A DNA stretch of 64,000 nt, taken from contig CM097884.1 in assembly GCA_044892505.1 (NCBI GenBank), positions 95,976,001-96,040,000 of the forward strand, given 5' to 3'. Below are positions 34,136 to 56,224 of this stretch, piece after piece. The stretch's first letter is position 1; each line of letters opens with the position of its first letter. Made by a program: the position numbers and the translations under genes. The DNA is from Schmidtea nova. Lineage: Eukaryota. A model generated the notes under the pieces. That model was given only the letters and a program-made list of their open reading frames with translations. It did no database searches and was not told the DNA's origin.

Positions 34136-34155
34136 CAGCGATCCGCTCAGACTAC

Positions 34156-35023
34156 TGTTGGGTATTTGTTTAAAGTCGGTTCTAATTTCTGACTCCTGGT
34201 GTTCTTTTAACAAATAACTGACCCAACACAATAACTTTTATTTCAATATCACAATTTATCACAACGATTGCACAATATAAGAACTGTCTTTTACACTTAA
34301 CTTGAACTGCTTTCAAGTCACTTGCTGCGAGGGATAAGTCTCCCGAAGGAAGATCTCCCTTTCTGGTGCGCAAACAAATGAATTACGTTTTACTCTACGA
34401 CACTACCTTTTCTGACTCTTCTTCTAATTTCAATCTGTTTGCTGAAATTTTATCTCTTCGACCAACTGGCGACACATTGCAATTCGCTTCTGTTTTTATA
34501 TTGCTCCCTCCTTAATGCTTGCTTGTTCTGCCTCCCAATTTGACATTTGAATCCGCGATTCAAATTAAACTGTCATATTGTAATTTAGTAGCTCTCGCCG
34601 TTTCCATATCCTTCAAATTAACTGTCATAGTGTAATTTAGTAGCTCTCGCCGTTTCCACATCCTTGGAGCAAATTGAACTGTCACTTTGCTTGAGCGGGT
34701 TTCTCTCATCTCTCGGGCTCTCCATTGGCTCGGGCTTCCCATTGTCTCGGGCTTTCCATTAGCCAATTAATTCTTAATTAATATTTTAATTTTTTAATTA
34801 TTTCTTTCTAGGGACCCCCCATCGATTTTATTTTTTATTTATTTGAATTCGTCTCATAATTTGGCACACACCCATACCAATTTCCCCCATGATATATTGA
34901 TTTTAAATTTTATTAATTTTTTAATTAATGTTTTAATATTTTAATTAATTTGGTGATTTTTGCAATTTTACTAATTTTATTTAATTACTTTTAAATTTTG
35001 AGTCACTTTGACAAACCCCAACA
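34156..35023 (-). repeat. 3' LTR (868 bp)
   Basis: TGTTGGG...CCCAACA; differs from the 5' LTR at 34485/49297 and 34810/49622 by eye. Confidence 0.97.
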
Positions 35024-35025
35024 TA

Positions 35026-35037
35026 TCTCCCCCCTTT
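35026..35037 (-). promoter_or_regulatory. Polypurine tract
   Basis: AAAGGGGGGAGA on the minus strand, 2 nt before the 3' LTR. Confidence 0.9.

Positions 35038-35510: not shown

Positions 35511-35598
<88 letters not shown>
35460..35598. repeat. (AAT)n microsatellite in the element's 3' non-coding region
   Basis: Long AAT run; a second run at 36216-36260; explains the poly-I, poly-N and poly-L pseudo-ORFs. Confidence 0.97.
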
Positions 35599-35599
<1 letters not shown>

Positions 35600-35916: not shown

Positions 35917-36165
35917 NNNNNNNNNNNNNNNNNNNNNNNNNNNNNNNNNNNNNNNNNNNNNNNNNNNNNNNNNNNNNNNNNNNNNNNNNNNNNNNNNNNN
36001 NNNNNNNNNNNNNNNNNNNNNNNNNNNNNNNNNNNNNNNNNNNNNNNNNNNNNNNNNNNNNNNNNNNNNNNNNNNNNNNNNNNNNNNNNNNNNNNNNNNN
36101 NNNNNNNNNNNNNNNNNNNNNNNNNNNNNNNNNNNNNNNNNNNNNNNNNNNNNNNNNNNNNNNNN
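35917..36165. other. Assembly gap (N run) inside the LTR element
   Basis: Run of N. Confidence 1.
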
Positions 36166-36216
36166 AATTAAATATTTATTAGCAACTGTTGTAGTGTGTT
36201 CGAGAAAAATTCCATG

Positions 36217-36261
<45 letters not shown>

Positions 36262-36668: not shown

Positions 36669-38075
36669 TTAATTAAATTTTAATTCCAAGCTCTCTTCTC
36701 CACACCAATATTGGACGATTGTTCCTTTTCGCACATATGTCTTTCCTGCATATGTTATCGAATTTTCAATTTGCAAATTTGAACCCACTTTTCTTTTCCT
36801 AGTTTCTTTGGCTGTTGAACCCTTTATAAGTGTTGACTTTGCTCTTCCAATAATTGAGCTTGTAAATATTGCCAAACTTTCTTCAATGGGCTCCAGAATA
36901 GTTTCCTCTGCCAACTTCAATTGTATTTCAATTTCCATTATTGATGGTTCTTCTATTGTCAGGTCCACTGTTGTTGTCATTTCCGATGTGCTCTGTGTTG
37001 CTCGTAAATTTCTGTATTCCTCCAGCGAATATATTTTTGAGGGCTGTTTCCTGGGAATCATCACATCATCGATCCATTGACTCTCCACTTTCAAATAAAC
37101 TTTTCTAATGCTTTTCACATCTTCCAACGCGGTGTGGATGCCTGTTTGTGTTTTTTCTCCGCATAATTCTTCAGTGATTGTTTTTAACTTAAACCATTCT
37201 CCTTTTCGGCTTACATTCATTGATTTTAACACTTGCGCTGCTGCCAAATCTCGAATGCCATATAATTTATTGATCCAAATTCCAAGATTATTCAATTCCG
37301 CTTGGAGATCATGACCAATCAGTATTTTTCCTATGGTCAACCTCTGAATATCTTTCATCTCCTGATATTGATCTGCCTGATTTCTACTGGCCACTTCCGT
37401 TATTCCGTGGATTTTGGAATTAAAATGTCTTACTTTCCCTCTTGGTGTAATGTATGTATTTTTTATAATTTTTCCATAATAATTTAGGATTGCGATTGAC
37501 AACGGAATCATTTTTCCGCTTTCGGAGCTTCCATATTCCGCATCGATAAACAAAATTCGATTACGGATTTCTTCTAGATCCATCTCCTTTCTAACAAATG
37601 AGAGCTTCCGTTTTAACATTTCATCTGAAATTGCCATCAAATCCTCCTCATTAGCTTCTGTCGGATGTGTACTTGGAATTTCTCCAACTTCATTTTCAAT
37701 TCTGGTTTCGATAACCATTATGGCATCCTCGTTTGCGGCTCGCAACAAATTGAACATTATTTCCCTCTGCAGTTTCCACGTAGTAAATTTTTTTAATTCC
37801 TTCCGAATCTGATTCCTTTCGTTTAGCATTTCTACCGTGCCTTTTATTATGTGGAGATAATATTGTTCTTTTCTTGCCAATTGCATTTCCTCTGATAACT
37901 TCATTTTGGTGTTTCTGTGCAATTTTAGAATTTGTATTTTCATTCTTCTGTCATCACTTCGAAGGTAGTTGGGAATTTGCAGATTGTTGTTGATCTGGAA
38001 TTTTTGTCCGGCATGGCTTCTGCTGAGTCTGGCGTAACTGTCGTGTACCGATCTTGGCCATTGTAATTGTTCCAT
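36669..38075 (-). CDS. 468-aa protein with an ISG20/REX4-like DEDDh 3'-5' exonuclease domain (about 37090-37560)
   Basis: ExoI ILFIDAEYG; SIAILNYYGKII..TYITP..V..FNSKIHGIT; ExoII GKILIGHDLQAEL; IRDLA; ExoIII HTALED; intact ORF inside the LTR element. Confidence 0.88.
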   Translation of the reverse strand: MEQLQWPRSVHDSYARLSRSHAGQKFQINNNLQIPNYLRSDDRRMKIQILKLHRNTKMKLSEEMQLARKEQYYLHIIKGTVEMLNERNQIRKELKKFTTWKLQREIMFNLLRAANEDAIMVIETRIENEVGEIPSTHPTEANEEDLMAISDEMLKRKLSFVRKEMDLEEIRNRILFIDAEYGSSESGKMIPLSIAILNYYGKIIKNTYITPRGKVRHFNSKIHGITEVASRNQADQYQEMKDIQRLTIGKILIGHDLQAELNNLGIWINKLYGIRDLAAAQVLKSMNVSRKGEWFKLKTITEELCGEKTQTGIHTALEDVKSIRKVYLKVESQWIDDVMIPRKQPSKIYSLEEYRNLRATQSTSEMTTTVDLTIEEPSIMEIEIQLKLAEETILEPIEESLAIFTSSIIGRAKSTLIKGSTAKETRKRKVGSNLQIENSITYAGKTYVRKGTIVQYWCGEESLELKFN

Positions 38076-38491: not shown

Positions 38492-39680
38492 CTACACAAA
38501 TGTCTCATCGAAGACAAACCAAGGTCTCGAAGGTTCGGATTGATTTGCCGGAGATTGAAATGATTTTTCGAATATGCACAATACGATAGCCATGATAACT
38601 GTTAGAATTACTGCAAAAGAAATGATGATTATAATCAATGTTATGCACATTTTTTCATTATTCGTTTTCAGGAACAATTTAGTTTGATTATTTACAATTG
38701 ATTTATTGATAGGAATGTTATTAAGAAATGTTGTGGTTTGATATTGGTGTGAATCGTTTGGGTATGCTTCATCATATGAGACTTGAATGAGTTTATTTTC
38801 GACAAACGTTATCTGCCATTGATTTGAATATCGAGTACGACGATGATATTTGATTTTTACGAGAACTAATTTCGACATTGGGTTTGATTGCGATTGTTGA
38901 AAAATTATTGTTTGAGATTGTCTTTTGCTGTCTAGAATTGCTTGCATTTTCCCATAACAATATATAACCGCCTTTTGATTAGGGTCTGTTTGCCTGGTGA
39001 CTTTTATTGCTTGATGGTAGATGTGAAATTGAACTCTATTCGTTTCATTAATTAATGTTATCGTTTGTTGACTGGTGTGAACTTTAACCCATTGATTCTC
39101 CGTATCGGTGCCATTTTCATATAAAGTCTTCTCATAATAGTGAATCACAACATTATAAGTCTGAAATAACTTTAAATTAATATAATTTATGAAGGGTTTT
39201 CTACTATTCAATGTGTCTATTGCATAATTTTGGAAAATCGTTTTTACTTGTTGGGATTCTTGGGGTTCCCAATATACATTAATACTATTTATCGAAGGTT
39301 CAATTGATACCAAATTTTCCCACTTTTTTGTCCAAATTTCTAGGCGTATTATATTACGTATTTCCGTAGTATTCTTTTTAGGATCTAGCTGTGCTACCCG
39401 CCAGGGATATTTGTAATTCATTGTCAGATGACGTGCAACATGATAATTATTATTATAATCCAATTTCACCGGGGGTTCAAAATAATTTAATAAATTATTT
39501 ATTTCTACTTCCTCATCTTTTTCACAGAAATAAATCCACACAATCTGAGTACATGTTGCAAATGTATTGATTCTCTCTAACAATGGGATTCGTTTTGTTG
39601 CAACCGATGGAAGAAATCGTACTGCATTCGTACACAAAACATTCAACATCATTACTGTAGAAATTAGTAAAATTTTATTA
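38492..39680 (-). CDS. Putative second type-I membrane glycoprotein fused behind the integrase
   Basis: Signal-like KILLISTVMMLNVLCTNA; ~330-aa ectodomain with sequons NTT, NGT, NET, NKS, NQT; TM ITLIIIIISFAVILTVIMAIVLCIF; short tail; family unrecognised. Confidence 0.7.
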
Positions 39681-42600
39681 ATGTAGCTTGATGGGGCTGG
39701 GTTTCTATTATACCTCTGTTTGATTGCTTCATCTTCCTTCCGTTTTGATCGTAATGGATATTGTTTTAACTCTTCCACCGGCACCTTTTTACAGCGGTTT
39801 ACATGAACAACTATTGTTCCAGCTTTTTTATTATTCTGTGGACGCAACTTTAGATTAGTCTCTGTAGCATCACATACTACATATGGTCCTTTAAAAGGTC
39901 TTTGCAGTTTCACTGACAATCCTTTAGTCGGCTCTGGCTTATTTACATACACTAAATCTCCAATTTTAATATCATGCGCATGTGCGCGTTTATCATAGCA
40001 CTCTTTATAAGCTTCTTGATGGTGTTTTATTTTAAGACCTGCTTGAACCCATACTGACTGCAATCTCTCTTGCATAATTACTTTATAATCGGATACATCC
40101 ATATATTGGGAAATAGGTGACTGAAATTTCAAATCAATTGGCATATTATTACGTCGTAAATACATAAGGTAGAAAGGTGTTTCACCGGTACTTTCATTAC
40201 CTGCATTCCGATATGCAAATAGGCATGGTTTAATATACAAATCCCAATCTTTTTGCTTTCTATTTACATAAGAAGATATCATATTTATTAGTGTTCCATT
40301 GAATCTTTCCACTAAGCCATCTGTTTGTGGATGATAAGGTGATGTACTTATTTTCATTATTCCGAATAATTCTGTGATCGATTTGAATAAATCACTTTGA
40401 AAATTTGTTCCTTGATCTGTAAGTAATTTTTTTGGTGCTCCATATCGAAAGATTATGTTTTCAACAAATATTTTTGCTACTGTCTCTGCTTTTTGATTTG
40501 GCATAGGATAAGCTTCTGGCCATTTTGTTAAATAGTCACAAAAGACAATAATGTATTTATTTCCATTTGTCGTTTCTGGTAGTGGACCCACGATGTCCAT
40601 TGCCGTCATTTCCATCGGCGCTTGTGGTACTGGCATTGGCTTTAAAGGAACTTTAATTTTCTTTCCTGTATTTCTCCTGGTTAGACATATTTCACACGTA
40701 TGACACCACTGTTTGACATCTTGCTCCATCGTGTCCCAATAATATTTTTGCTTTAATCTCGATAATGTTTTACGTGCTGATAAATGTCCTCCCAATGCTC
40801 CATCATGATACAACAACAGTAATGATCTTCGATATTTTGTTGGAACGATAATTAATAAATTTTCATTTTTTACACATTTTAGCAAACCATCATGGACAAT
40901 ATATTTATGTTTTTCCTCAACAACATGTTTCCAGTCACTCTCCTTTTTGATGGTGACAGCATGTTGACGTAGCTGATTTAATTCAATATCATTTTCTTGA
41001 TCATTTTGTAATTCTTTTAGATTGTTTACAGTTTTAATTGCCATAAATATTGTATTTTCATAATTTATTTCACTTCTACCATCATTATTTTCGTCATTAA
41101 TTCTCGATAACGCATCGGCATTTGCATTTGACTTTCCTGAACGGTACTTTATTTCGAAATCATATTCTTGCAGCGCAATTGACCATCGGATTAATTTGCT
41201 GGCTGAATCTCTGTGCTTCATGAGCCATTGCAGTGGATTATGGTCCGTAAAAACAATAAACTTTCTACCGATTAGGTGTTGTCTGAAAGTAGTTATTCCA
41301 TATACCAACGCTAAAGTCTCTTTTTCGATTGTAGAATAATTCTTTTCATGTGGCTTTAATGTTCGACTAGCATAGGCAATTACATGATCTTTTTCACCTT
41401 CCACTTGTTGACCCAACACTGCTCCTAATGCGAAATTACTGGCATCTGTCATTAATATGAACTGTCTCTTAAAGTCTGGGCATCTCAAAATTGGTTGTTT
41501 TAATAAACTTTCTTTCAGAATATCAAATGCATTTTGTTGAGCCGTCATCCATTTAAATTTAGTTTGCTTTTTAAGCAGTATATTCAAAGGTTGTGCTACA
41601 TGCGAAAAATTTTTAATAAATTTTCTATAATAACCTGCTAAACCAAGAAATTGTCGAACTTGATCAACATCTTTTGGAATTGGATAATTTTTGATTTTCT
41701 CTACATTTTCGGGATTCGGCTGTAATCCACGTCTTGAAATAATATGACCCACATAAACAACTTCAGACTTTCCCCATTCGCATTTTGATGGTTTTATTTT
41801 TAAATTTGCTTTTAATAATCTTTTGAATACTGTTTCAACATCTTTTAAATGCTCTTGAAAACTGCCTGAAAATATTATTATGTCATCAATATAGACTAAT
41901 GCATGTGGAATGTCGCGTAATACGAAATTCATGCCTCTCTGAAAAGTAGCAGGTGCTCCTGTTAATCCAAATGGTAAAACGTTAAACTCGTATAGGCCTT
42001 TACCATCTGAAAATGCAGTTTTTCTCTTGTCATCCTCTTTTACTTTAAATTGGTTGTATCCTTTATTTAAATCAATTACTGTGAAAAATTGTACCTCGCC
42101 CATTTGATCAAACATTTCCTGTGGAACTGGAATAGGATATGTATCTTTTCTCGTGACCTGATTCAACTTTCGATAATCTACACAAAATCGCAAATCTCCA
42201 TCTTTCTTTTTAACAACCACTATCGATGATGAAAATGGTGATGAACTATCTCGTATAATATTGAACTCTTTCATTGCTTTAATTTGCCGATCACTTTCCT
42301 CTTGATGAACGTACGGAATCCTATACGGTCTCAATTTGATAGGAGTTTCATCAAGTAATGGTATCTCATGCTCAATTATTTGAGTAAGTCCCAAATCATA
42401 TTCATGCCTAGCAAATACACTTTTGTATTTCATTAATAGGGCTGTAAATTCTTCTCTTTGCTCATCTGTCAAATCCTTGCTTGTAACTTGAGGTTGTTTA
42501 TAAATTTTAATGTTCCTTGGTAACTTTTGAACTTCTTCAGCTTCAATTTTTATCAATTTCCCCAATTTTGTTTTGGGTTGCATCTGGATAGATTTTGTGC

Positions 42601-44158
42601 CACAATTTGCTATTCGTACTGGCACTAATTTATTTTTGACTCTCACTAACTCATCACACATAGGTAAATCATATTTTTCTATTAGTTTGTGATTTGGCTC
42701 AAATATGCATTCCTCATCTGGTGCATTTATAACATCTGCATAATATATTATTTCGCTTTTTGATGGTACTTCAACCATTTGATTTAGAAATACTTCTCCG
42801 ATCTCCTCAATAACTTCACCAGTTTGACCTTTCACTAATTTTCCGGTATTTAGATCGAGTGAGATTCCTTTTAACTGCTCCATAACGTCCATACCAATAA
42901 GGCATTTAACCGGGCTCTTTCTCATTACCACTACCCAGTGGGATATCTCTTGATCTCCAATCTTTAATTTGGCTTGTACTTTCCCTATGATATTCAGCAA
43001 ATTATGCGACATTGATTTAATACGCTTATTCGTTGGTTTCATTTCTTTAATTTCTTGATACATTAATAATTCCTCTGACACAATAGTATGACTTGAACCT
43101 GAATCTAATAAGGCTTGCACTTTTCGATCATTAAATAAGACATCAATCCGAGGTTGTTTTCCTCCCGTTACCATCGTCATTAGTGCATAGCTGCATGGTA
43201 ATCCGAGCATATTTTTGCGTTCAATTTCTGCACTCGTTGGTTCAATTTTCTCTGTTCCACTTTGAATATCATCTAATGGTTTCATCTCTTTTAACTTTTC
43301 TCCGGGATATACAGGTGCTGTCGGTACAAATGTTGGAGTATACCATCGAGTTAGTGTATCAATTCCGCTTAATTTTGGCATTGGTTCTAGTAAGAATCTA
43401 GTTTCTGGTTCTGTTTTATTTTTCAATATACCCTTCCGATAATATTTTGACTCGGTATTACCTCCATCATTATTATTGTTCTGACTATTGATCTCTTCCG
43501 ATTGACATAATGATTCCTCACTTTTTTGATCCTTTCTCAATTGTGCTCTTACATTTGCCATTTCTTTGTATTGATGATTTGTAATGAAAAATCTGGCCAA
43601 AAATGGGATACAACCGATTATTATTTTCCATGACCATCCGGAAATAGCGTATATTCTATGTGCTGACAACACTTGCGATACTATCACTTTCATTGTCACT
43701 GCAATTACGTAGATTCCAATTAAACCGGCACAAGCTTGTCCTAAGAACATAAATTTACCCCAAATCTTTTCCATTGTTTTATACGTGGCTCTTTTAAAAT
43801 GATCGGGCGTCAACAAATACTCATAATTCACTTTTCCCTCTCCATTGGGTAATATTGTATCAACCATTTCTGAAATTACCCTTTCCTTTTTCGATGGAAA
43901 TAACAAATTTCTTTGAGCCTCTTCGATATCTTCGCTTGCATACAAACCCGTTTGTGCCATTTTATTTAATGATGTGAAATTTACTAAATATTCTAAGTTC
44001 GTTAATTCTAATTTATCGGGTGTTTTTACTCCTCTGTAATCTGGTAACGCTATCCATGAATCTGGCGTTAAACGATACAACGGCGCAAGTAGTCGATTGC
44101 ATTGTAATATTTTCGGTTTCGTCTGTTCTTCAAGCAATATTCGAGTAATTGGTTCCAT
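38492..44158 (-). CDS. pol: 1888-aa polyprotein segment: env C-terminus/TM, PR, RT, RNase H, IN, second membrane protein
   Basis: LLDSGS (43105); LRFCVDYRKLN, LPFGL, YIDD (41890); TDAS RNase H; HHCC, MDIVGP, TDQG, VERFN, GPY integrase; in frame with both upstream ORFs. Confidence 0.97.
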   Translation of the reverse strand: MEPITRILLEEQTKPKILQCNRLLAPLYRLTPDSWIALPDYRGVKTPDKLELTNLEYLVNFTSLNKMAQTGLYASEDIEEAQRNLLFPSKKERVISEMVDTILPNGEGKVNYEYLLTPDHFKRATYKTMEKIWGKFMFLGQACAGLIGIYVIAVTMKVIVSQVLSAHRIYAISGWSWKIIIGCIPFLARFFITNHQYKEMANVRAQLRKDQKSEESLCQSEEINSQNNNNDGGNTESKYYRKGILKNKTEPETRFLLEPMPKLSGIDTLTRWYTPTFVPTAPVYPGEKLKEMKPLDDIQSGTEKIEPTSAEIERKNMLGLPCSYALMTMVTGGKQPRIDVLFNDRKVQALLDSGSSHTIVSEELLMYQEIKEMKPTNKRIKSMSHNLLNIIGKVQAKLKIGDQEISHWVVVMRKSPVKCLIGMDVMEQLKGISLDLNTGKLVKGQTGEVIEEIGEVFLNQMVEVPSKSEIIYYADVINAPDEECIFEPNHKLIEKYDLPMCDELVRVKNKLVPVRIANCGTKSIQMQPKTKLGKLIKIEAEEVQKLPRNIKIYKQPQVTSKDLTDEQREEFTALLMKYKSVFARHEYDLGLTQIIEHEIPLLDETPIKLRPYRIPYVHQEESDRQIKAMKEFNIIRDSSSPFSSSIVVVKKKDGDLRFCVDYRKLNQVTRKDTYPIPVPQEMFDQMGEVQFFTVIDLNKGYNQFKVKEDDKRKTAFSDGKGLYEFNVLPFGLTGAPATFQRGMNFVLRDIPHALVYIDDIIIFSGSFQEHLKDVETVFKRLLKANLKIKPSKCEWGKSEVVYVGHIISRRGLQPNPENVEKIKNYPIPKDVDQVRQFLGLAGYYRKFIKNFSHVAQPLNILLKKQTKFKWMTAQQNAFDILKESLLKQPILRCPDFKRQFILMTDASNFALGAVLGQQVEGEKDHVIAYASRTLKPHEKNYSTIEKETLALVYGITTFRQHLIGRKFIVFTDHNPLQWLMKHRDSASKLIRWSIALQEYDFEIKYRSGKSNANADALSRINDENNDGRSEINYENTIFMAIKTVNNLKELQNDQENDIELNQLRQHAVTIKKESDWKHVVEEKHKYIVHDGLLKCVKNENLLIIVPTKYRRSLLLLYHDGALGGHLSARKTLSRLKQKYYWDTMEQDVKQWCHTCEICLTRRNTGKKIKVPLKPMPVPQAPMEMTAMDIVGPLPETTNGNKYIIVFCDYLTKWPEAYPMPNQKAETVAKIFVENIIFRYGAPKKLLTDQGTNFQSDLFKSITELFGIMKISTSPYHPQTDGLVERFNGTLINMISSYVNRKQKDWDLYIKPCLFAYRNAGNESTGETPFYLMYLRRNNMPIDLKFQSPISQYMDVSDYKVIMQERLQSVWVQAGLKIKHHQEAYKECYDKRAHAHDIKIGDLVYVNKPEPTKGLSVKLQRPFKGPYVVCDATETNLKLRPQNNKKAGTIVVHVNRCKKVPVEELKQYPLRSKRKEDEAIKQRYNRNPAPSSYINKILLISTVMMLNVLCTNAVRFLPSVATKRIPLLERINTFATCTQIVWIYFCEKDEEVEINNLLNYFEPPVKLDYNNNYHVARHLTMNYKYPWRVAQLDPKKNTTEIRNIIRLEIWTKKWENLVSIEPSINSINVYWEPQESQQVKTIFQNYAIDTLNSRKPFINYINLKLFQTYNVVIHYYEKTLYENGTDTENQWVKVHTSQQTITLINETNRVQFHIYHQAIKVTRQTDPNQKAVIYCYGKMQAILDSKRQSQTIIFQQSQSNPMSKLVLVKIKYHRRTRYSNQWQITFVENKLIQVSYDEAYPNDSHQYQTTTFLNNIPINKSIVNNQTKLFLKTNNEKMCITLIIIIISFAVILTVIMAIVLCIFEKSFQSPANQSEPSRPWFVFDETFV
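39780..40830 (-). CDS. Integrase domain (HHCC, DDE, GPY/F)
   Basis: YHDGALGGH...CHTCEIC; AMDIVGP, LTDQGTNF, GLVERFN; FKGPY. Confidence 0.97.
41100..42400 (-). CDS. Reverse transcriptase and RNase H domains
   Basis: PYRIP, DLNKGYNQF, YIDDII, FLGLAGYYRKFI, FILMTDAS, EKETLA, TDHNPL, NADALSR. Confidence 0.98.
42850..43160 (-). CDS. Retropepsin protease domain
   Basis: VQALLDSGSSHTIV ... CLIGMDVM. Confidence 0.95.
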
Positions 44159-45450
44159 AAATCGTAGCTTACCCCCAACACTTACGGGTAACTCATTTGT
44201 GCATTTTTCATATTTTGCAATTTTTACAGCGATTTCCTTACATTTGTAACTATATAATGCTTCTCAAAAAATTCTCGCAAATACGCCATTTTCCGATATC
44301 AGCATAGGGGCTACTAAGTTCGGGTTTGTGACTGCCATTGCCATTCGATTCCGAAGAATGTCTTTATTCAATTTACAATCATTAAGAATCATTTCTCTAT
44401 AAACATTCTCCATGATGTCTTGACTAAAATGAAATAAATAATCGATTTTGTTATTGAAATAATGCGTTAATTTAATGTCGTTTACATGAATTTTAGTTTT
44501 TGCGTCTTCAACTATTCCTTTTGAAACATAGACGCCTTTATAATTTGTTGTATATAATATTCGCCCACATTTATTCGTAACTTCCTTTTTTATAAAACGC
44601 ATGCTATCCGTTGGCGATGTTGACATCAGAACTGCACTCATTTTCCTGGTCATTATTGGAGTTGATTTAATTGCTTCTTTTGATTTATAATTCATGCTAA
44701 AACTATCGGGTCTTTCCTGAAATTGTTCTCCGATTATTTCTTTAAAATTCATAGTTTTTAGAAAAGCCAAATTACATTCATTTACCTTTACATTATAAAC
44801 TAAAATCGACTCTCCTGTTTGACAATTTGTCTGTTTCATATTACAGAATGGATGTGTCTGTAATTTTCCCGTATCGTCATCAAATGCTCCTTCGAACTCT
44901 CTAAGTTCCGTAACGTACTCCTCAAATACTACCGTTTTATCCACCATTTTACCATTCATTTTATACGGTTCGCCTTCGCAATCTCCATTTGCTTTCATTA
45001 TCCCTTTCACAACTACTGTCTCTCGTATTCTGTGATTTAATTTAGCTTTCAATCGGATTTCCGAACTTATTTTTAATTCTCCTGTTTGAAATGCTGTCAA
45101 ACAATTTTCTGGAAAAATCTCAACTGGTCTCGGTATTGCATTTACTTTTATTAATGACGAGTGGCTCCACTTTCCACAATAAAACACAAACGTTGTATGT
45201 TTCACGCTACACTCTCTAACTTTAGTTCGTCGTAAATCTGATTCTTGATATACGTGGTATTTTACATCATTTTCAACTTTTAATTTACTCGGATAGGCAT
45301 CTGGGCATTCTGACATATCTACTACTGAATAAATTTTTCCCATTTCCGTTTGGGAGCAATCATATGCAACTAATGACGTCGCTTGTGCAATAACTGTACA
45401 CAGGATAATCATTGTAAACATCAACCATGGGAATATTCCTATTCTCTTCG
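43560..45450 (-). CDS. env: Envelope fusion glycoprotein, Chuviridae G-like (class III-like), with one in-frame TGA at 44264-44266
   Basis: Signal peptide then LVAYDC; YCG..SH; G.CEG..Y; YFNNKIDY; C..N...L.N.MA...P; ARIF[*]EALYSYKC...C.NELPV...FMEPITRIL; GLYASEDI; WGKFMFLGQACAGLIGIY TM; GWSWK. Confidence 0.85.
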
Positions 45451-47647
45451 TTTTCAGCCTGACTTTATCCCACAATTGTCTTGTTCCTTCCTCATTTTCT
45501 TTCGTATCTAGTGGTGGGCACAATGTCATCCAACCACCCTTTTCTTTTATCCATTTGCGCAAATATTCATTTAGCATTCTGGCTGCTATATCTATTAAAT
45601 CATCAAGCTTTTCCGGTTCTACAAACGCATGAGTTCCTATTTCCAAAATTGCATATGTCAGACTCATCAATACTACCTCCCTATTCACTTCCTTTTGGAT
45701 CAACTCTTCAAAAACCTTTCTCTCACAGAAATTATTTCCTCTACCAAATCGTTGTACTACTTCAGGAAGCCTATTTTTCAATTCTTTGACTATCTCTTCC
45801 ACATCTTCCTCCACTTGCAATTCTATCTCAAACATTGGATATATCGTTTTAAGCAGATGCTTTAATATCTGTTTTGTTTCATCTACTTCTTTTTCAACTC
45901 TTACCAAATTTCTCTTTATTTCATACAAAGTTCTAGGTTTACCATTTTTATTGCTAACTTCATTAAGCACATCTGATTTTTGTCTTTCCGCTTCCTGTAC
46001 CTGATCTCTCACTATTGGATTCTTCTGAAAACTGCCATCTATAATAGTCTCATTTTCTTCAGTTTCTTCGATTTCCTCCTCCCCTTCGTCTGACTCTGAA
46101 TTCTCTAATTCTTCCATTCTTCCTACTTGTACTTCCTTCACCGCTACTATTCGATTTTTTACATATCCATTACTTCCCTCCATACTTAAATATCCCTCTT
46201 CATTTACTTCTAACGGTAAACACCCGCAATCATATAGATACTCGTCATCATCTAACAGTTCCCCTTTATACCTCAACGTTATGATTCCATCCATTCCTAA
46301 CATTTTCGAAGCTCTTCTACGTACCCTTTTTACCTTTGTGCACCAATGCTCTTCAGTATATTCCGTCTTTCCACGCTCTTCATAATCTATTGCTATAACT
46401 AAACGATTCTGCTCGACTCTGTCTTTTCTAAGCTCTTTACCCATTTTCCTCAATAAGCTTTTAAGCTTTTTACTGTATCTAGTTCTCCCAGATAAATATG
46501 GTCGTATTAAATTCGCGATTTCTACTTTATCTTTAGATTCAAGCTCACATTCCTCGATCATTTTTAATTTGTCATTTATTTCATTTTCATCTCCACTATA
46601 TAATGCATCATTTAACTCTTTTATAATTTCTACTGGATCTCTTTTAATTGTCACACAATCTTTTTGTAGCGTAATTATTTGCAACTCGTTTTCATTACCT
46701 GGAATAAACCCACAATCTATTAAATATTCGTTATCTTCTAATTTTTGATTTTTAAATCTCAACTCTCTCATTAATCCATCTCGTTTGTCTGTTAATTTAT
46801 TTTTTAAATCTCTCACACAATCATTGACTTCACAACGTATACAATTTACACTTTTATCCCTCTCATCAACAACATCAATAAAAATAAAATCTAACCATTC
46901 CTTTTCTCGAAACATTTTCCCAAATATTTTCATCATATCTTTTATTTCGTCTCTATCCTTTGAATTCACTTCACAATAACTTGCACATACATTAATTACA
47001 CTTTTTAATTTCCTCATATTCAATGACATTTTACTCAATTCTTTTAGCGAACTCATTATTTTGGATGAATCTTCTCTTCTCGCTTCTATTAATTTTTCAA
47101 TTCTTGTTATAATCATTGTCGATAAGTCAATTCCTAGATCATCTTTGACACATTTTCTTTTCGTTTCAGTTTCCATCATTCCTTCTGAGTCATACATCAT
47201 TTGATTATTTACTTCCTCATCGGATTCAAATTTTGACATAAGCCGATCCAAACGTCGACCTATTTCTTTAACTTCGCTTTCAATTCTTTCTTTGAAATCA
47301 TCTGGCTGAACAAAAGCTACATTATCATGCATGGATTTATCAGTTTGGAATCTGATTGTTTTCTTTAGAATTGGTCTTTGAAATTTATCATTATTTCTGG
47401 GGCACGACCTGGCCATATGTCCATAACCTCTGCATGAGTGGCATTGGATTTGTCCTTGCAAATTGACTTTGTCCCTCTGCGGTGATGGTGATGTCGATGG
47501 AGATCTTGACTTGGCATAACAATTTCTCGATACATGTCCTTTCTTTCCGCAATTGAAACAATGCATATTATCATTTACTCGTGGAGTACTGTCATTAAAT
47601 TTGTTAAACATTTTATCATCATTACCTTTCATCCAATCCGGCCACAT
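44264..47647 (-). CDS. 1127-aa segment: 2 zinc knuckles, coiled coil, 2 ubiquitin-like domains, Bcl-2-like domain, env ectodomain
   Basis: CFNCGKKGHVSRNC and CHSCRGYGHMARSC; Ubl, BH1/BH2 and env motifs as listed in the separate features. Confidence 0.9.
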   Translation of the reverse strand: MWPDWMKGNDDKMFNKFNDSTPRVNDNMHCFNCGKKGHVSRNCYAKSRSPSTSPSPQRDKVNLQGQIQCHSCRGYGHMARSCPRNNDKFQRPILKKTIRFQTDKSMHDNVAFVQPDDFKERIESEVKEIGRRLDRLMSKFESDEEVNNQMMYDSEGMMETETKRKCVKDDLGIDLSTMIITRIEKLIEARREDSSKIMSSLKELSKMSLNMRKLKSVINVCASYCEVNSKDRDEIKDMMKIFGKMFREKEWLDFIFIDVVDERDKSVNCIRCEVNDCVRDLKNKLTDKRDGLMRELRFKNQKLEDNEYLIDCGFIPGNENELQIITLQKDCVTIKRDPVEIIKELNDALYSGDENEINDKLKMIEECELESKDKVEIANLIRPYLSGRTRYSKKLKSLLRKMGKELRKDRVEQNRLVIAIDYEERGKTEYTEEHWCTKVKRVRRRASKMLGMDGIITLRYKGELLDDDEYLYDCGCLPLEVNEEGYLSMEGSNGYVKNRIVAVKEVQVGRMEELENSESDEGEEEIEETEENETIIDGSFQKNPIVRDQVQEAERQKSDVLNEVSNKNGKPRTLYEIKRNLVRVEKEVDETKQILKHLLKTIYPMFEIELQVEEDVEEIVKELKNRLPEVVQRFGRGNNFCERKVFEELIQKEVNREVVLMSLTYAILEIGTHAFVEPEKLDDLIDIAARMLNEYLRKWIKEKGGWMTLCPPLDTKENEEGTRQLWDKVRLKTKRIGIFPWLMFTMIILCTVIAQATSLVAYDCSQTEMGKIYSVVDMSECPDAYPSKLKVENDVKYHVYQESDLRRTKVRECSVKHTTFVFYCGKWSHSSLIKVNAIPRPVEIFPENCLTAFQTGELKISSEIRLKAKLNHRIRETVVVKGIMKANGDCEGEPYKMNGKMVDKTVVFEEYVTELREFEGAFDDDTGKLQTHPFCNMKQTNCQTGESILVYNVKVNECNLAFLKTMNFKEIIGEQFQERPDSFSMNYKSKEAIKSTPIMTRKMSAVLMSTSPTDSMRFIKKEVTNKCGRILYTTNYKGVYVSKGIVEDAKTKIHVNDIKLTHYFNNKIDYLFHFSQDIMENVYREMILNDCKLNKDILRNRMAMAVTNPNLVAPMLISENGVFARIF
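45520..45930 (-). CDS. Bcl-2-family-like domain
   Basis: BH2-like YLRKWIKEKGGW; BH1-like VFEELIQKEVNREVVLMSLTY (NWGR degenerate) with plausible spacing; basic stretch and hydrophobic helix follow. Confidence 0.75.
46180..46405 (-). CDS. Ubiquitin-like domain 2
   Basis: TKVKRVRRRASKMLG...ITLRYKGELLDDDEYLYDCG resembles ubiquitin QRLIFAGKQLEDGRTLSDY. Confidence 0.6.
46665..46895 (-). CDS. Ubiquitin-like domain 1
   Basis: EVNDCVRDLKNKLTDKRDG...RELRFKNQKLEDNEYLIDCG...LQII resembles ubiquitin VEPSDTIENVKAKIQDKEG...RLIFAGKQLEDGRTLSDY...LHLV. Confidence 0.7.
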
Positions 47648-48577
47648 TCACTTTGGACTTCTCTGCATGTTCTCGTTGAACCAACATTGATTACTAGTAT
47701 GACCCATCTTTTGACAATTATTGCATTGAATTGGAGTTGGGCTTCTTTGGGATCTGTTTTTGAGCCAACATTGATTCACATGATGTCCCATTCTTTGACA
47801 ATGGCTGCATTGTATTGGCATTTCTTTCTCCTCCCTTGGAGCATTAGTTGTTTGACTTGATTGGAATTTGGCTTTGAATTTTGGCGAAGGACTGCTATAT
47901 TGTTGAAATCTGTTGTTCTTCTCAGGAGTTACTGATCGTTCTTGTTTTTGTTCCATCATTGCAAACGATTCTGAATTTGATTGTGTACTTTTCAAATTAA
48001 GCTCAATTTTCATGGCCTTTTTGATTAATTCATCGAAGTTGTTGAAATCGACATAGCATAAAGCCTTTTTGATTTCCTTTTTAACTCCCGATAAAAATTG
48101 ATCTTGCAACAGTTCCCTTACTTGCTTTGCCACTTCTGGTTGATCGGGTTTGGTTTCGAAAGCTTTTTCTGCAAGAGTCGTTAGATGATAAGCAAATTCA
48201 CTTACAGATTCATCAGATTTTTGCATTCGATTGTAAAATTTTTGGCGCATAATCCTTTTGATATCTCCTCCGATCAATTTAGCGGCTAATGAATCTTTAA
48301 GTCTCATCCAGTCATTTCCGATTGTCCTTTTGTCAATTTGTTGCCATACTTCTCTGGCTGCTCCCTTTAAATACAAGGGCAATCTTTGTATCATCGTGGC
48401 TTGGCTCCATCCATACGCATTGGCATACATATAATAGTCTGCCATGAAATCGACAAATTCAACTGGATCTCCTCCATATTGGTTAACTGGTAGCTTTTGA
48501 CAATTAGCGAGATCATTGCCATTTCCTGCGTGACTTGTCGACATCGGCGCTTCATCATTACTATTTGAATTGCTCAT
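47648..48577 (-). CDS. gag: Gag (capsid domain plus 2 CCHC zinc knuckles), 309 aa
   Basis: LPLYLKGAAREVW, FYNRMQKSDESVSEFAYHL, DQFLSG; CSHCQRMGHHVNQC and CNNCQKMGHTSNQC; its TGA is followed immediately by an in-frame ATG. Confidence 0.95.
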   Translation of the reverse strand: MSNSNSNDEAPMSTSHAGNGNDLANCQKLPVNQYGGDPVEFVDFMADYYMYANAYGWSQATMIQRLPLYLKGAAREVWQQIDKRTIGNDWMRLKDSLAAKLIGGDIKRIMRQKFYNRMQKSDESVSEFAYHLTTLAEKAFETKPDQPEVAKQVRELLQDQFLSGVKKEIKKALCYVDFNNFDELIKKAMKIELNLKSTQSNSESFAMMEQKQERSVTPEKNNRFQQYSSPSPKFKAKFQSSQTTNAPREEKEMPIQCSHCQRMGHHVNQCWLKNRSQRSPTPIQCNNCQKMGHTSNQCWFNENMQRSPK

Positions 48578-48946
48578 ATTATTCTGATATTTCGTTTGGC
48601 TTCTTAATTGATAAAATGGTCGAGTTGGTAACGTTTTCTCTCGTCTAAATTTTAAAATATCAATTATTAAATTTACCCTTTATTCGTCTTTGTTTTCTCA
48701 AACTTCAATTTTCACTTTTTCACGATTCAACTTTTATTCACACAAAAATTTCCAATTTATTTCTAGCAATCAATTTATTTTCACAATTCTTTTTCAACTT
48801 TTTTAATATTTTCAATTTATTTTCAATGCTTTCAGTTTCAAATTTCTCTCAATATATCCACTCTATTCACTAACGATATCACCGATTTTCACACCTTTTA
48901 TTGTAATTTATTCAATTAATTCTCCACCAATTCTTCACCGACTTTG

Positions 48947-48964
48947 ATCACGTCGGGCTCACCA
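48947..48964 (-). promoter_or_regulatory. 18-nt primer-binding site, tRNA-Trp-like
   Basis: TGGTGAGCCCGACGTGAT, 3 nt from the 5' LTR; one mismatch to the common metazoan tRNA-Trp end ATCACGTCGGGGTCACCA. Confidence 0.85.
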
Positions 48965-48967
48965 AAA

Positions 48968-49835
48968 TGTTGGGTATTTGTTTAAAGTCGGTTCTAATTT
49001 CTGACTCCTGGTGTTCTTTTAACAAATAACTGACCCAACACAATAACTTTTATTTCAATATCACAATTTATCACAACGATTGCACAATATAAGAACTGTC
49101 TTTTACACTTAACTTGAACTGCTTTCAAGTCACTTGCTGCGAGGGATAAGTCTCCCGAAGGAAGATCTCCCTTTCTGGTGCGCAAACAAATGAATTACGT
49201 TTTACTCTACGACACTACCTTTTCTGACTCTTCTTCTAATTTCAATCTGTTTGCTGAAATTTTATCTCTTCGACCAACTGGCGACACATTGCAATTTGCT
49301 TCTGTTTTTATATTGCTCCCTCCTTAATGCTTGCTTGTTCTGCCTCCCAATTTGACATTTGAATCCGCGATTCAAATTAAACTGTCATATTGTAATTTAG
49401 TAGCTCTCGCCGTTTCCATATCCTTCAAATTAACTGTCATAGTGTAATTTAGTAGCTCTCGCCGTTTCCACATCCTTGGAGCAAATTGAACTGTCACTTT
49501 GCTTGAGCGGGTTTCTCTCATCTCTCGGGCTCTCCATTGGCTCGGGCTTCCCATTGTCTCGGGCTTTCCATTAGCCAATTAATTCTTAATTAATATTTTA
49601 ATTTTTTAATTATTTCTTTCTGGGGACCCCCCATCGATTTTATTTTTTATTTATTTGAATTCGTCTCATAATTTGGCACACACCCATACCAATTTCCCCC
49701 ATGATATATTGATTTTAAATTTTATTAATTTTTTAATTAATGTTTTAATATTTTAATTAATTTGGTGATTTTTGCAATTTTACTAATTTTATTTAATTAC
49801 TTTTAAATTTTGAGTCACTTTGACAAACCCCAACA
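48968..49835 (-). repeat. 5' LTR (868 bp)
   Basis: Near-identical to 34156-35023. Confidence 0.97.
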
Positions 49836-50099
49836 CTACTTTCACCCGTACGGCTCAAAGCCTGAACAGATGTCAGAGGGTATGGAAGTGGTTTTAATGA
49901 AATACATAAAAAATATAAATATATACATGATAAATAACAATAAAATGATATTAGTAACTGAGAAAATGTGACGAAATTTAATAAAAATTTGAATATAAAA
50001 AATTATAATTTTCATAAAATAATACATAAAATATCATATAGTACACATAGCCTAAGGTTAAAATAAGGAAAAATACCTAGACCGCGTAGCGAGGACATG

Positions 50100-54776: not shown

Positions 54777-56224
54777 CCCTTTGGCAGACAACGACGTGTT
54801 TATTGCGTCATGTGGTGGTTTTTTGTAGGACATGACGTGATATCACGTCAATATTTGCAAACGCAATAAAGCCATGACATCATGTCATTGACATGATATA
54901 ATGTCTTTGTTTTTATATGTTTACTTAGGAATTCAACATATTGTGTGTCCCATTAGAAGACATATAAGCAAAATGTGTGTCCCGTCAGAAATATTTATAA
55001 AGTATATTGTTTAACGTGAACATGTTTGGTCGTGAAATTCTTTGATATCACCATGACGTGATATGCCATCACAGATCCATATGAAAATTATTAATTATGC
55101 GACAAGTGTTCAACAAATAACATATTTTTGTGTTAGTCGTGAAAAACGTATTTTTAATTATTTTTATGTTTAAATTGATTTTATTTAAATTTATAAATAT
55201 CTAATATAATATAGATATAAATAAAAAATAACTAATTTACATTTATGAATAATAAAAAATTATAGAAATGGACCAATATGAAAAACAGAGACAAAATTTT
55301 AAAACTTTTTGAGGATGTTGGTGATGATTTGGATGAATCTGATATATCTGAAGCTGATGCATTCAGCGCAGGAAGTGAAGTGGACCCAAATTATGTACCG
55401 GAAGAAACTTCTGATGAAGATGATGATGATGAAAATATTCAAAATGGTGGAGCCGTTGTCCTTGATGTAGTTGTCATTCCAAATTTTAATTTTGACCATA
55501 CAACTGCAGGAATTCAGATACCAATTGAAGATAATGCCACACCGGTAGAAATATTCGAAAAGTAAATTACATCACAAATATTGTCAATGTTGGTACATTC
55601 AACTAATGAGTACGGGTCAAAAATATGCAAGACAGATAAACCTAAGTTAAGATATTCGAGAATGGCTGTTTTAACCCAGTTGATACTATTGAAATGAAGA
55701 AATTTTTTTGTCTATGTTTTCTACAAGGCCAAATCAAAACACAGAAGATTAGACATTTATTTTCATCAAATCCATTATACCATCATCCAATTTTTTCAAA
55801 AACAATACCTGGAAGGTGGTTTGAGCATATTCTGCGTTGTTTCAATATATTTCTGAATGGGGAGAAATATAAATGTAAAAATACCAACAAATTATTAAAT
55901 ATGTTGTGTCAGAACTTCAGAAAGATTAATAGTCCTGGTGAATGTTTGACTTTGGATGAATTCTTATTATTGTTCAAAGGTCGTCTTCGTTTTGAACAAT
56001 ATATACCATGCAAACAAGAACGATATGAAATTAAATTTTTTGAACTTTGTGATCTTAATGAATATGTTTATAGTATTGAAATGTATCAAGGAAGGTTTGT
56101 AGAAATTGACAACTCACAAAATGTTTCTTTATTTAAAATATATAGTATTGTTATGAAATTAATGAGCAATTTGTTACACAAAGGACATATATTATTTATG
56201 GATAATTTCTACAATAGTTTTTGA
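54777..56224 (+). mobile_element. piggyBac transposon, 3'-truncated and degenerate
   Basis: TTAA then CCCTTTGGC left end; acidic N-terminus; TLDEFLLLFKGRLRFEQYIP and FMDNFYNS (PGBD4-like); right TIR not found. Confidence 0.85.

What the first reader, a model, noticed from the sequence alone, without database searches (positions are those of the whole stretch)
45380..45930. Bcl-2-like domain in a retroelement, whose tail anchor would double as the env signal peptide
WIKEKGGW is a close BH2 match and a BH1-like helix lies at a plausible distance upstream. The NWGR signature is altered to NREV, as can happen in divergent viral Bcl-2 proteins. The next hydrophobic helix, preceded by KVRLKTKR, is both where a Bcl-2 tail anchor would sit and the env signal sequence. 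Cleavage would leave a membrane-anchored Gag-Ubl-Bcl-2 product. Viral Bcl-2 homologues are established in large DNA viruses; I do not know of one in an LTR element. It could block apoptosis or autophagy in germline or infected cells (inference).
Basis: partly seen in the sequence, partly recalled or inferred. Interest (0 to 1): 0.9.

Follow-up and report, generated by a model that had tools for sequence, protein, structure and literature searches.

The report
Bcl-2-like domain in an endogenous retrovirus
A young retrovirus-like element in this AT-rich animal genome carries, just ahead of its envelope gene's signal sequence, a divergent copy of the Bcl-2 cell-death-regulator fold, a host-like gene so far reported only in large DNA viruses.

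Summary
Window 45512-45931 (minus strand) encodes a 140-residue helical domain.

- **Pfam:** it matches the Bcl-2 profile over nearly the whole profile (E 1.7e-5), but scores below Pfam's curated cut-off.
- **Solved structures:** a profile built from five diverged relatives hits Bcl-xL and Bcl-2 (E 3.8e-5).
- **Predicted fold:** AlphaFold2 gives pLDDT 82 and pTM 0.78, and the top 50 Foldseek hits in the PDB are all Bcl-2 family proteins.

The BH2 motif is conserved. BH1 is degenerate and no BH3 core motif is present.

The domain lies inside a 15.7-kb Ty3/gypsy-type element with gag-env-pol order. Its LTRs are 868 bp with 2 mismatches, and it has a 4-bp target duplication. Twenty-nine residues after BH2 comes a basic cluster, then a 21-residue hydrophobic segment, then the N-terminus of a class III fusion glycoprotein.

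Four diverged relatives from three metagenomes show the same layout. In one of them, 2558 codons running from the region upstream of the Bcl-2-like domain through env, protease and RT are a single open frame.

The tail-anchor/signal-peptide double use is therefore topologically coherent, but it is inferred. An anti-death function is untested. I found no earlier report of a Bcl-2 homologue in a reverse-transcribing element.

The parts
49836..49839 (-). Target-site duplication, upstream copy (GTAG)
   Evidence: Read directly next to the LTR ends.
48968..49835 (-). 5' LTR, 868 bp, TG...CA ends
   Evidence: Alignments. Two mismatches to the 3' LTR.
48946..48964 (-). Putative primer-binding site (starts TGG, 3 nt after the LTR)
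   Evidence: Sequence reading only. Not matched to a tRNA.
47648..48577 (-). gag ORF (309 aa): capsid-like domain and two CCHC zinc knuckles
   Evidence: Pfam Retrotrans_gag E 6.5e-7 and zf-CCHC.
47399..47563 (-). Second pair of CCHC zinc knuckles, at the start of the frame that carries the Bcl-2-like domain
   Evidence: Pfam zf-CCHC E 4e-7.
46706..46858 (-). Possible ubiquitin-like domain (weak). A second similar stretch lies further downstream.
   Evidence: Pfam ubiquitin E 0.089 here and E 0.0046 at the equivalent place in L003. No PDB sequence hit.
45512..45931 (-). Bcl-2-fold domain, 140 aa, six to seven predicted helices
   Evidence: Pfam PF00452 E 1.7e-5. PDB profile search, Bcl-xL E 3.8e-5. 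AF2 pLDDT 81.8, pTM 0.78. Foldseek PDB top 50 all Bcl-2 family, TM 0.5-0.62.
45674..45685 (-). BH1-equivalent position (NREV), at the start of the central hydrophobic helix
   Evidence: HMMER alignment to Bcl-xL. Hydrophobic 19-mer at ORF residues 658-676.
45530..45553 (-). BH2 motif (W-x5-G-W core)
   Evidence: Aligned to BH2 of Bcl-xL. G and W are invariant in 5 of 5 relatives.
45443..45529 (-). 29-residue linker ending in a basic cluster (+6/-1 in the 15 residues before the best-scoring 17-residue hydrophobic window)
45380..45442 (-). 21-residue hydrophobic segment: internal signal sequence of env and presumed C-terminal membrane anchor of the Bcl-2-like product
   Evidence: Kyte-Doolittle 2.3. 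The Pfam glycoprotein profile starts inside it. A small-residue A-x-A ending lies three residues before the conserved glycoprotein N-terminus. An equivalent segment is present in relatives.
43439..45379 (-). Class III fusion glycoprotein gene (env), ectodomain to cytoplasmic tail. In this copy it is interrupted once by an in-frame stop, with no frameshift.
   Evidence: Pfam PF24664 Monjiviricetes_fusion, E 1e-39 and 6e-31 for the two pieces. Stop count. Membrane anchor at 43661-43756.
42866..43159 (-). Aspartic protease
   Evidence: Pfam gag-asp_proteas and RVP.
41738..42214 (-). Reverse transcriptase
   Evidence: Pfam RVT_1 E 3e-31.
41162..41551 (-). RNase H
   Evidence: Pfam RT_RNaseH E 2e-38.
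40286..40846 (-). Integrase (zinc-binding domain and core)
   Evidence: Pfam Integrase_H2C2 and rve.
38495..39676 (-). Second membrane-protein-like region fused after integrase: hydrophobic segment, about 320 residues with 6 N-glycosylation sequons, strong C-terminal membrane anchor
   Evidence: Hydropathy and sequon count. No Pfam or PDB relative.
36669..38075 (-). Accessory ORF (468 aa) with an ISG20/SDN1-like DEDDh 3'-5' exoribonuclease domain
   Evidence: PDB phmmer: ISG20L2 E 2.6e-5, ISG20 E 1.1e-4, SDN1 E 4.8e-4.
35917..36165 (.). Run of N inside the element (assembly gap or masked). Left as it is.
35026..35037 (-). Polypurine tract
   Evidence: Read directly.
34156..35023 (-). 3' LTR, 868 bp
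34152..34155 (-). Target-site duplication, downstream copy (GTAG)

Best explanation
The region encodes a divergent Bcl-2-family domain that belongs to a lineage of Ty3/gypsy-type endogenous retroviruses with gag-env-pol gene order.

Shown: the domain is homologous to cellular Bcl-2/Bcl-xL and is predicted to adopt their helical bundle. It is conserved in position, together with its BH2 motif, in five diverged elements. It is always followed by a variable linker with net positive charge, a hydrophobic segment, and then the conserved N-terminus of a class III fusion glycoprotein. In one relative, everything from the region upstream of the domain through env, protease and RT is one uninterrupted reading frame.

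Inferred: the element is translated as a membrane-threaded polyprotein. The hydrophobic segment acts as an internal signal sequence with its N-terminus in the cytosol, and the glycoprotein ectodomain enters the ER. Signal peptidase cuts just before the glycoprotein N-terminus. The upstream zinc-knuckle / ubiquitin-like / Bcl-2-like product then keeps the signal sequence as a C-terminal anchor. That is the topology of a cellular tail-anchored Bcl-2 protein.

Most likely function (inference): like the Bcl-2 homologues of large DNA viruses, it restrains a host death or autophagy response in cells that express the element. With BH1 degenerate and no BH3 core, its partners may differ from the canonical ones.
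For: Sequence:
- Pfam Bcl-2 E 1.7e-5 over profile positions 3-100 of 100.
- Independent sub-threshold Bcl-2 matches in relatives L001 (E 0.012) and L002 (E 8.4e-4).
- The PDB search improves from E 0.07 (single sequence) to 0.0013 (2 sequences) to 3.8e-5 (5 sequences). Of the 60 hits listed, 58 are Bcl-xL or Bcl-2, including the first 57; ranks 58 and 59 are de novo designed helical proteins.

Structure:
- AF2 on a 3-sequence alignment gives pLDDT 81.8 and pTM 0.78.
- All of the top 50 Foldseek PDB hits are Bcl-2 family proteins: BAK, BAX, Mcl-1, Bcl-2, Bcl-xL, Trichoplax Bcl-2L2, a Schistosoma Bcl-2 homologue and KSHV KsBcl-2. TM-scores are 0.46-0.62.
- In BFVD, most of the 20 best matches are named viral Bcl-2 proteins.

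Architecture:
- The same order, Bcl-2-like then basic linker then hydrophobic segment then glycoprotein N-terminus, appears in L001-L004.
- L004 has 2558 codons with no stop, covering the Bcl-2-like domain, full-length env, protease, RT and RNase H.
- Hydrophobic segments along the window's long frame alternate so that gag, the Bcl-2-like domain and pol stay cytosolic while both glycoprotein-like parts are lumenal.
- The element is young: 2 LTR mismatches in 868 bp, with a target-site duplication.
Against: - The Pfam score (25.7 bits) is below the curated cut-off of 31.4.
- The BH1 signature is not kept. The N survives in 2 of 5 sequences. The window has no basic residue at the position of the signature's arginine, while 3 of 5 relatives have lysine there.
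- No L-x3-[GAS]-D BH3 core is present in any of the five sequences.
- Only one of the five AF2 models was confident, the alignment had 3 sequences, and Foldseek E-values are modest (4e-3 and above).
- In this copy an in-frame stop separates gag from the domain's frame and another interrupts env, so this copy may not make the full product.
- No expression, cleavage or binding data exist.
- The host is unidentified, so no comparison with host Bcl-2 genes was possible.
Confidence: 0.72

Rival explanations
1. The domain has the Bcl-2 fold but serves as a structural, matrix-like adaptor. It would hold the Gag-side proteins at the membrane beside env for particle assembly, with no role in cell death or autophagy.
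For: BH1 is degenerate and no BH3 core exists. The domain sits between the nucleocapsid-like part and env, anchored in the same membrane as env. It evolves faster than env: 18-26% identity to relatives, against 40% for the glycoprotein part.
Against: BH2 and the hydrophobic core pattern are kept across all five sequences. Many viral Bcl-2 proteins that act on cell death also lack recognisable BH motifs (review PMC11209288). A membrane tether would not need this particular fold.
Confidence: 0.2
2. The domain is a Bax/Bak-like membrane-permeabilising module used by the element, for example in release or entry, rather than a survival factor.
For: The best Foldseek hits are BAK and BAX. The central helix is strongly hydrophobic.
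Against: Differences between subfamilies in Foldseek scores are small. The best sequence matches are the pro-survival Bcl-xL and Bcl-2. There is no BH3 core motif, which effector activity requires (plus established knowledge of Bax/Bak).
Confidence: 0.05
3. The resemblance is a chance match of an all-helical linker, or an exon of a host Bcl-2 gene that lies next to the element through insertion or misassembly.
For: The Pfam score is below the curated cut-off. A search of 1.84 billion representative proteins gave no cellular Bcl-2 hit at E<=0.001.
Against: Three independent lines agree: Pfam, the PDB profile search and the fold search. The signal grows as relatives are added. The domain lies in frame inside the element, between intact LTRs. 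It recurs in the same place in four other elements from three other samples.
Confidence: 0.03

Closest known systems
Cellular multi-motif Bcl-2 proteins (Bcl-xL, Bcl-2, invertebrate homologues such as Trichoplax Bcl-2L2 and the Schistosoma Bcl-2 homologue)
   Same: Predicted helical bundle. BH2 motif. Conserved leucine and aromatic positions around the central helix. A hydrophobic membrane segment about 30 residues after BH2, preceded by basic residues.
   Different: It is not a free-standing gene but a domain inside a retroelement polyprotein. BH1 is degenerate and no BH3 core is present. The score is below Pfam's cut-off. The membrane segment is not at a translational C-terminus; it becomes one only after cleavage (inferred).
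Viral Bcl-2 homologues of large dsDNA viruses (herpes-, pox-, irido-, asfar- and adenoviruses)
   Same: A Bcl-2 fold encoded by a virus-like agent, with weak or missing BH motifs. These proteins are the best named matches in the BFVD viral structure library. They are known to block apoptosis and Beclin-dependent autophagy (PMC11209288).
   Different: All described carriers are dsDNA viruses with separate genes. Here the carrier is a reverse-transcribing LTR element, and the domain is fused in frame directly upstream of the env signal sequence.
GAG-ENV-POL Ty3/gypsy errantivirus-like elements with class III (gB/G-type) env, reported in Nematoda, Bryozoa and Platyhelminthes (eLife 2026, PMC13524379; Sacco et al. 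2022, cited there)
   Same: LTR element with env between gag and pol, a class III fusogen, and recent copies.
   Different: That paper does not mention Bcl-2, ubiquitin or a polyprotein (0 occurrences). The Sacco paper is not in the held library and could not be read, so I cannot say whether it mentions the domain. The window's element also carries an exonuclease ORF and a second membrane-protein region after integrase. The host of the window is unidentified, so assignment to one of those phyla is not shown.
Internal signal sequences that become C-terminal anchors of the upstream protein in viral polyproteins (flavivirus capsid anchor, hepacivirus core-E1 signal). From my own knowledge; not tested here.
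   Same: A cytosolic protein, then a hydrophobic signal, then a lumenal glycoprotein, with signal peptidase cutting on the lumenal side.
   Different: Those are RNA-virus polyproteins. Such threading has not, to my knowledge, been described for a gag-env-pol retroelement, and here the anchored protein has a Bcl-2 fold.

Membership tests
Bcl-2 family (Pfam PF00452) | Profile score at or above the curated gathering cut-off | tested here: not met
   25.7 bits against a 31.4-bit cut-off. E 1.7e-5, covering profile positions 3-100 of 100. Relatives score 16.5 and 20.3 bits.
Bcl-2 family (Pfam PF00452) | Bcl-2 helical-bundle fold around a central hydrophobic helix | tested here: met
   AF2 pLDDT 81.8 and pTM 0.78. 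Foldseek PDB top 50 all Bcl-2 family, TM up to 0.62. This is a prediction, not an experimental structure.
Bcl-2 family (Pfam PF00452) | BH2 motif (W ... G-G-W) | tested here: met
   Aligned to Bcl-xL BH2. G-W is invariant in 5 of 5 sequences, and the preceding G in 4 of 5.
Bcl-2 family (Pfam PF00452) | BH1 motif (N-W-G-R) | tested here: not met
   The window has N-R-E-V at the aligned place. N is kept in 2 of 5 sequences, and lysine sits at the arginine position in 3 of 5.
Bcl-2 family (Pfam PF00452) | BH3 core (L-x3-G/A/S-D) | tested here: not met
   No match in any of the five domains. Some pro-survival and viral members also lack it.
Bcl-2 family (Pfam PF00452) | C-terminal tail anchor | tested here: inconclusive
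   A hydrophobic segment lies 29 residues after BH2, preceded by a basic cluster. It becomes C-terminal only if signal peptidase cleaves, which was not tested.
Bcl-2 family (Pfam PF00452) | Binds BH3 helices or regulates membrane permeabilisation or autophagy | not testable with these tools
   No binding or cell data are available.
Viral Bcl-2 homologues | Bcl-2 fold encoded by a virus or virus-like element and conserved within its lineage | tested here: met
   The domain lies inside an LTR element and is present in five diverged elements. The best BFVD matches are viral Bcl-2 proteins.
Ty3/gypsy (Metaviridae) LTR retroelement | LTRs with TG..CA ends and a target duplication; gag with CCHC; PR-RT-RNase H-IN order | tested here: met
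GAG-ENV-POL errantivirus-like elements | Class III fusion glycoprotein gene between gag and pol | tested here: met
   PF24664 matches between gag and protease. The same order is seen in L002 and L004. The arrangement is described in PMC13524379.

The most novel reading that the evidence does not exclude
A lineage of invertebrate endogenous retroviruses captured a host Bcl-2 gene and wired it into a membrane-threaded gag-env-pol polyprotein, so that the env signal peptide becomes the tail anchor of the Bcl-2-like protein. The anchored protein would then actively suppress host cell death or autophagy during replication. This would be the first Bcl-2 homologue of a reverse-transcribing element. 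With the ISG20/SDN1-like exonuclease ORF, it would form part of a set of host-derived counter-defence genes in a retroelement.
Probability: 0.35. Interest if true: 0.85.

Novelty: new variant of a known kind. Interest (0 to 1): 0.75.

Why it matters
Virus-encoded Bcl-2 homologues are a classic example of host-gene capture for controlling cell death. They have been described only in large dsDNA viruses, which have room for accessory genes.

Finding one conserved in a family of LTR retroelements would extend that strategy to reverse-transcribing agents of invertebrates. It suggests that these elements meet an apoptosis- or autophagy-based restriction in the cells where they replicate.

The layout is also unusual: a cytosolic Bcl-2-like domain, an internal signal sequence, a lumenal fusion glycoprotein, a membrane anchor and then cytosolic pol, all in one reading frame. 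This points to a flavivirus-like, membrane-threaded polyprotein in a retroelement, and offers an explanation of how gag-env-pol elements express env without splicing.

Both points can be checked with descriptive data: more genomes, transcriptomes, proteomes and a domain structure.

Tried and rejected
**Searches that found nothing or little**
- Word-indexed protein search with the frame's residues 540-745 found nothing.
- The same search with the 5-sequence profile also found nothing. Its length window excluded the one known short relative, so that blank says little.
I corrected it and resent it.
- The full HMMER scan of 1.84 billion representatives gave only one hit, a fragment of a related element, and no cellular Bcl-2 at E<=0.001.
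- The scan of IMG/VR viral contigs found nothing.
- Exact look-ups of three window proteins in public assemblies found nothing.
- Rfam and tRNA scans of the window found nothing. The host remains unidentified.

**Structure prediction**
- AF2 on the single sequence was uninformative, with pLDDT 44.
I did not send those rows anywhere else.

**Other checks**
- Ubiquitin-like domains could not be confirmed by a PDB sequence search.
- The region after integrase has no detectable relative.
- The Sacco et al. 2022 paper and the supplements of the eLife paper are not held.
- I considered a non-standard genetic code as the reason for the in-frame stops and rejected it. Relatives have open frames at those places, and the stops sit in different places in different copies.

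- Some of these coincide with places of interruptions in the window's env and in a relative.
- Consensus lines printed by the alignment tools were not used.
Full report
**1. What is at the coordinates**

The window is AT-rich (about 30% G+C) and full of transposons: pogo/Tc5 and piggyBac transposase fragments. The finding lies on the minus strand inside a long reading frame that starts at 47647.

- the BH2-like octapeptide, 45530-45553;
- NREV, 45674-45685, 40 residues upstream;
- a basic cluster, 45443-45466;
- a 21-residue hydrophobic segment, 45380-45442 (Kyte-Doolittle 2.3);
- from 45373 on, the N-terminus of a glycoprotein.

**2. The element around it**

Two 868-bp direct repeats (48968-49835 and 34156-35023) differ at 2 positions. 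They start TG and end CA, and are flanked by a 4-bp duplication, GTAG. A TGG-initiated primer-binding-like site follows the 5' copy and a polypurine tract precedes the 3' copy. This is a 15.7-kb LTR element, inserted recently.

Pfam gives this order:
- gag (capsid-like domain, two CCHC knuckles);
- two more CCHC knuckles;
- a weak ubiquitin-like signal;
- the Bcl-2 match;
- a class III fusion glycoprotein (PF24664 Monjiviricetes_fusion, E 1e-39 and 6e-31 for its two pieces);
- protease, reverse transcriptase, RNase H and integrase.

After integrase the same frame continues into a second membrane-protein-like region with no known relative. A separate 468-residue ORF follows, with an ISG20/SDN1-like DEDDh exoribonuclease domain. 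A run of N (35917-36165) lies between that ORF and the 3' LTR and was left as it is.

Everything from the gag start codon to the end of the integrase-bearing frame is in one reading frame with no frameshift. That frame has two internal in-frame stops, both TGA. One is at the end of gag. The other interrupts the glycoprotein gene once.

Gag-env-pol order with a class III env has been described for Ty3/gypsy errantivirus-like elements of Nematoda, Bryozoa and Platyhelminthes (PMC13524379). That paper does not mention Bcl-2.

**3. Is the domain really Bcl-2-like?**

Sequence evidence:
- Pfam PF00452 matches residues 619-706 of the frame over profile positions 4-100 of 100 with E 1.3e-4. For the 184-residue piece alone, the match covers positions 3-100 with E 1.7e-5 and 25.7 bits. 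This is below Pfam's curated cut-off of 31.4 bits.
- A single-sequence search of PDB chains gives only Bcl-xL and Bcl-2 at the top. It is weak (E 0.07) and limited to BH2.
- With a two-sequence profile the E-value improves to 0.0013, and the alignment extends from the BH1 region to BH2.
- With five sequences it reaches 3.8e-5 and 27 bits. Of the 60 hits listed, 58 are Bcl-xL or Bcl-2, including the first 57; two de novo designed helical proteins rank 58 and 59.
- A signal that grows as diverged relatives are added is the behaviour expected of true homology.
- Relatives L001 and L002 match the Pfam Bcl-2 profile on their own (E 0.012 and 8.4e-4).

Structure evidence:
- AlphaFold2 without an alignment was uninformative (pLDDT 44).
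- With a three-sequence alignment the best model has pLDDT 81.8 and pTM 0.78, with six to seven helices. The other four models stayed at 45-55.
- Foldseek against the PDB returns Bcl-2 family proteins in all 50 top places, over 132-164 aligned columns, with TM-scores of 0.46-0.62 normalised to the query. They include BAK, BAX, Mcl-1, Bcl-2, Bcl-xL, Trichoplax Bcl-2L2, a Schistosoma homologue and KSHV KsBcl-2.
- Against BFVD, the best named matches are the Bcl-2 homologues of herpes-, pox-, irido-, asfar- and adenoviruses.

It is not met on either count.

**4. Which family features are kept**

Across the five domains, 98 columns are occupied in all sequences. Four columns are identical in 5 of 5:
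- a leucine before the BH1 position;
- an aromatic residue in the central helix;
- the G-W of BH2.

Twenty-one columns are hydrophobic in 5 of 5.

BH1 is degenerate. The asparagine is kept in 2 of 5 sequences. The tryptophan and glycine are kept in none. A lysine stands at the arginine position in 3 of 5 sequences, but not in the window. No L-x3-[G/A/S]-D core of a BH3 motif occurs in any of the five.

I therefore file the domain as a divergent Bcl-2-fold homologue of the kind seen in viruses, not as a canonical multi-motif family member.

**5. Relatives and the conserved layout**

A HMMER scan of 1.84 billion representative proteins found a single relative. It lies on an ENA metagenome contig (L001) and is truncated by a nested insertion of an unrelated LTR element. 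A search with the glycoprotein part found L002. A pattern scan of JGI metagenomes found L003 and L004.

In all four relatives the order is the same:
- the Bcl-2-like domain;
- a linker with net positive charge before the hydrophobic segment. The distance from the G-W of BH2 to the best-scoring 17-residue hydrophobic window is 25-56 residues in L001, L002 and L004, and 31 in the window;
- a hydrophobic segment;
- 5-10 residues later, the conserved glycoprotein N-terminus.

Identity to the window is 18-26% in the Bcl-2-like domain and 40% in the glycoprotein.

- L004: the whole 7675-nt locus is one open frame of 2558 codons with no stop. It holds the Bcl-2-like domain, a full-length glycoprotein (E 2e-94), three protease-like stretches, RT and RNase H.
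- L003: gag, a zinc knuckle, a ubiquitin-like domain (Pfam E 0.0046) and the Bcl-2-like domain form one 997-codon ORF. One in-frame stop comes before the signal segment.
- L002: one frameshift within the Bcl-2-like domain, and gag in pieces. I used only the piece downstream of the frameshift.
- L001: cut by the nested insertion.

**6. How it most likely works**

Shown: the domain, its conservation, its position and the single-frame organisation in L004.

Inferred from established rules of membrane-protein biogenesis:
- Positive charges before the hydrophobic segment keep the N-terminal side cytosolic.
- The segment acts as an internal signal and sends the glycoprotein ectodomain into the ER.
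- The small residues at its end (an A-x-A ending in the window, three residues before the conserved glycoprotein N-terminus) fit signal-peptidase cleavage just before that N-terminus.
- The upstream product would then end in a membrane-spanning helix about 30 residues after BH2. That is the topology of tail-anchored cellular Bcl-2 proteins.

The rest of the frame is consistent with this. The glycoprotein's own anchor (43661-43756) returns the chain to the cytosol for protease, RT and integrase. A further pair of hydrophobic segments brackets the second glycoprotein-like region. This resembles the membrane-threaded polyproteins of flaviviruses (my own knowledge).

Whether the hydrophobic segment descends from a captured Bcl-2 tail anchor or from the glycoprotein's signal peptide cannot be decided. 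The Pfam glycoprotein profile begins inside it (position 5), which weakly favours the latter.

Function is inference. By analogy with the Bcl-2 homologues of dsDNA viruses (PMC11209288), the likeliest role is to damp a host death or autophagy response. A purely structural membrane-adaptor role is the main rival.

**7. Novelty**

The held literature gave no report of a Bcl-2 homologue in a retrovirus or retrotransposon. The recent review treats viral Bcl-2 as a feature of dsDNA viruses. The BFVD matches all come from such viruses.

The nearest thematic link is that some gag-derived mammalian genes (PNMA4/MOAP-1) interact with the Bcl-2 machinery. That is a different thing.

I rate this a new variant of a known kind: a viral Bcl-2 homologue in a new class of carrier with a new way of being anchored.

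**8. Limits and slips**

- The host is not identified.
- No comparison with host Bcl-2 genes was possible.
- The structure rests on one confident model from a three-sequence alignment.
- The ubiquitin-like domains are weakly supported.
I did not route those rows elsewhere.
- My first two notebook entries repeat ORF bounds printed by the ORF listing that coincide with interruption sites. I note this as a slip.

Noticed in passing
window 36669-38075 (-): A 468-residue ORF inside the element, between the integrase-bearing frame and the 3' LTR. It has an ISG20/ISG20L2/SDN1-like DEDDh 3'-5' exoribonuclease domain (PDB E 2.6e-5 to 4.8e-4), which Pfam did not call. It could be a host-derived accessory gene, perhaps acting on small RNAs (inference).
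   Followed up: partly
window 38495-39676 (-): After integrase the same frame continues into a hydrophobic segment, about 320 residues with 6 N-glycosylation sequons, and a strong C-terminal membrane anchor. This looks like a second putative membrane glycoprotein with no Pfam or PDB relative. L002's pol frame also ends with a strong hydrophobic segment.
   Followed up: partly
window 38492-48577 (-); L004 1-7675: gag, env and pol share one reading frame. In L004, 2558 consecutive codons are open from upstream of the Bcl-2-like domain into RNase H. Hydrophobic segments alternate so that the cytosolic and lumenal parts come out on the correct sides. This suggests a membrane-threaded polyprotein, which is unusual for a retroelement.
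   Followed up: partly
window 46088-46930 (-); L003 about 2008-2163: Two stretches in the window resemble ubiquitin-like beta-grasp domains (Pfam ubiquitin E 0.089). The equivalent place in L003 scores E 0.0046. A PDB sequence search gave nothing convincing.
   Followed up: partly
window 47399-47563 and 47648-47850 (-): There are four CCHC zinc knuckles in all: two at the end of the gag ORF and two at the start of the next frame. Relatives have one or two.
   Followed up: no
window 35264-36300: Long (TAA)n-rich low-complexity DNA flanks a 249-base run of N (35917-36165) inside the element, upstream of the 3' LTR. The N run was left as it is.
   Followed up: no
window 13111-14100, 17146-17748, 23876-24460, 55694-56224 (+): Fragments of pogo/Tc5-type (DDE_1, HTH_Tnp_Tc5) and piggyBac-type (DDE_Tnp_1_7) transposases. 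The window is a transposon-rich region with no tRNA or Rfam hit.
   Followed up: partly
L001 about 1161-7225: A different LTR element (gag 1254-2441, pol 2435-5824, repeated ends near 1161-1415 and 7010-7225) is inserted into the glycoprotein gene of the Bcl-2-bearing element on this metagenome contig.
   Followed up: partly
L004 residues about 1300-1940 of the open frame: Three aspartic-protease-like stretches and three extra hydrophobic segments lie between env and RT in this relative. The window has one protease.
   Followed up: no
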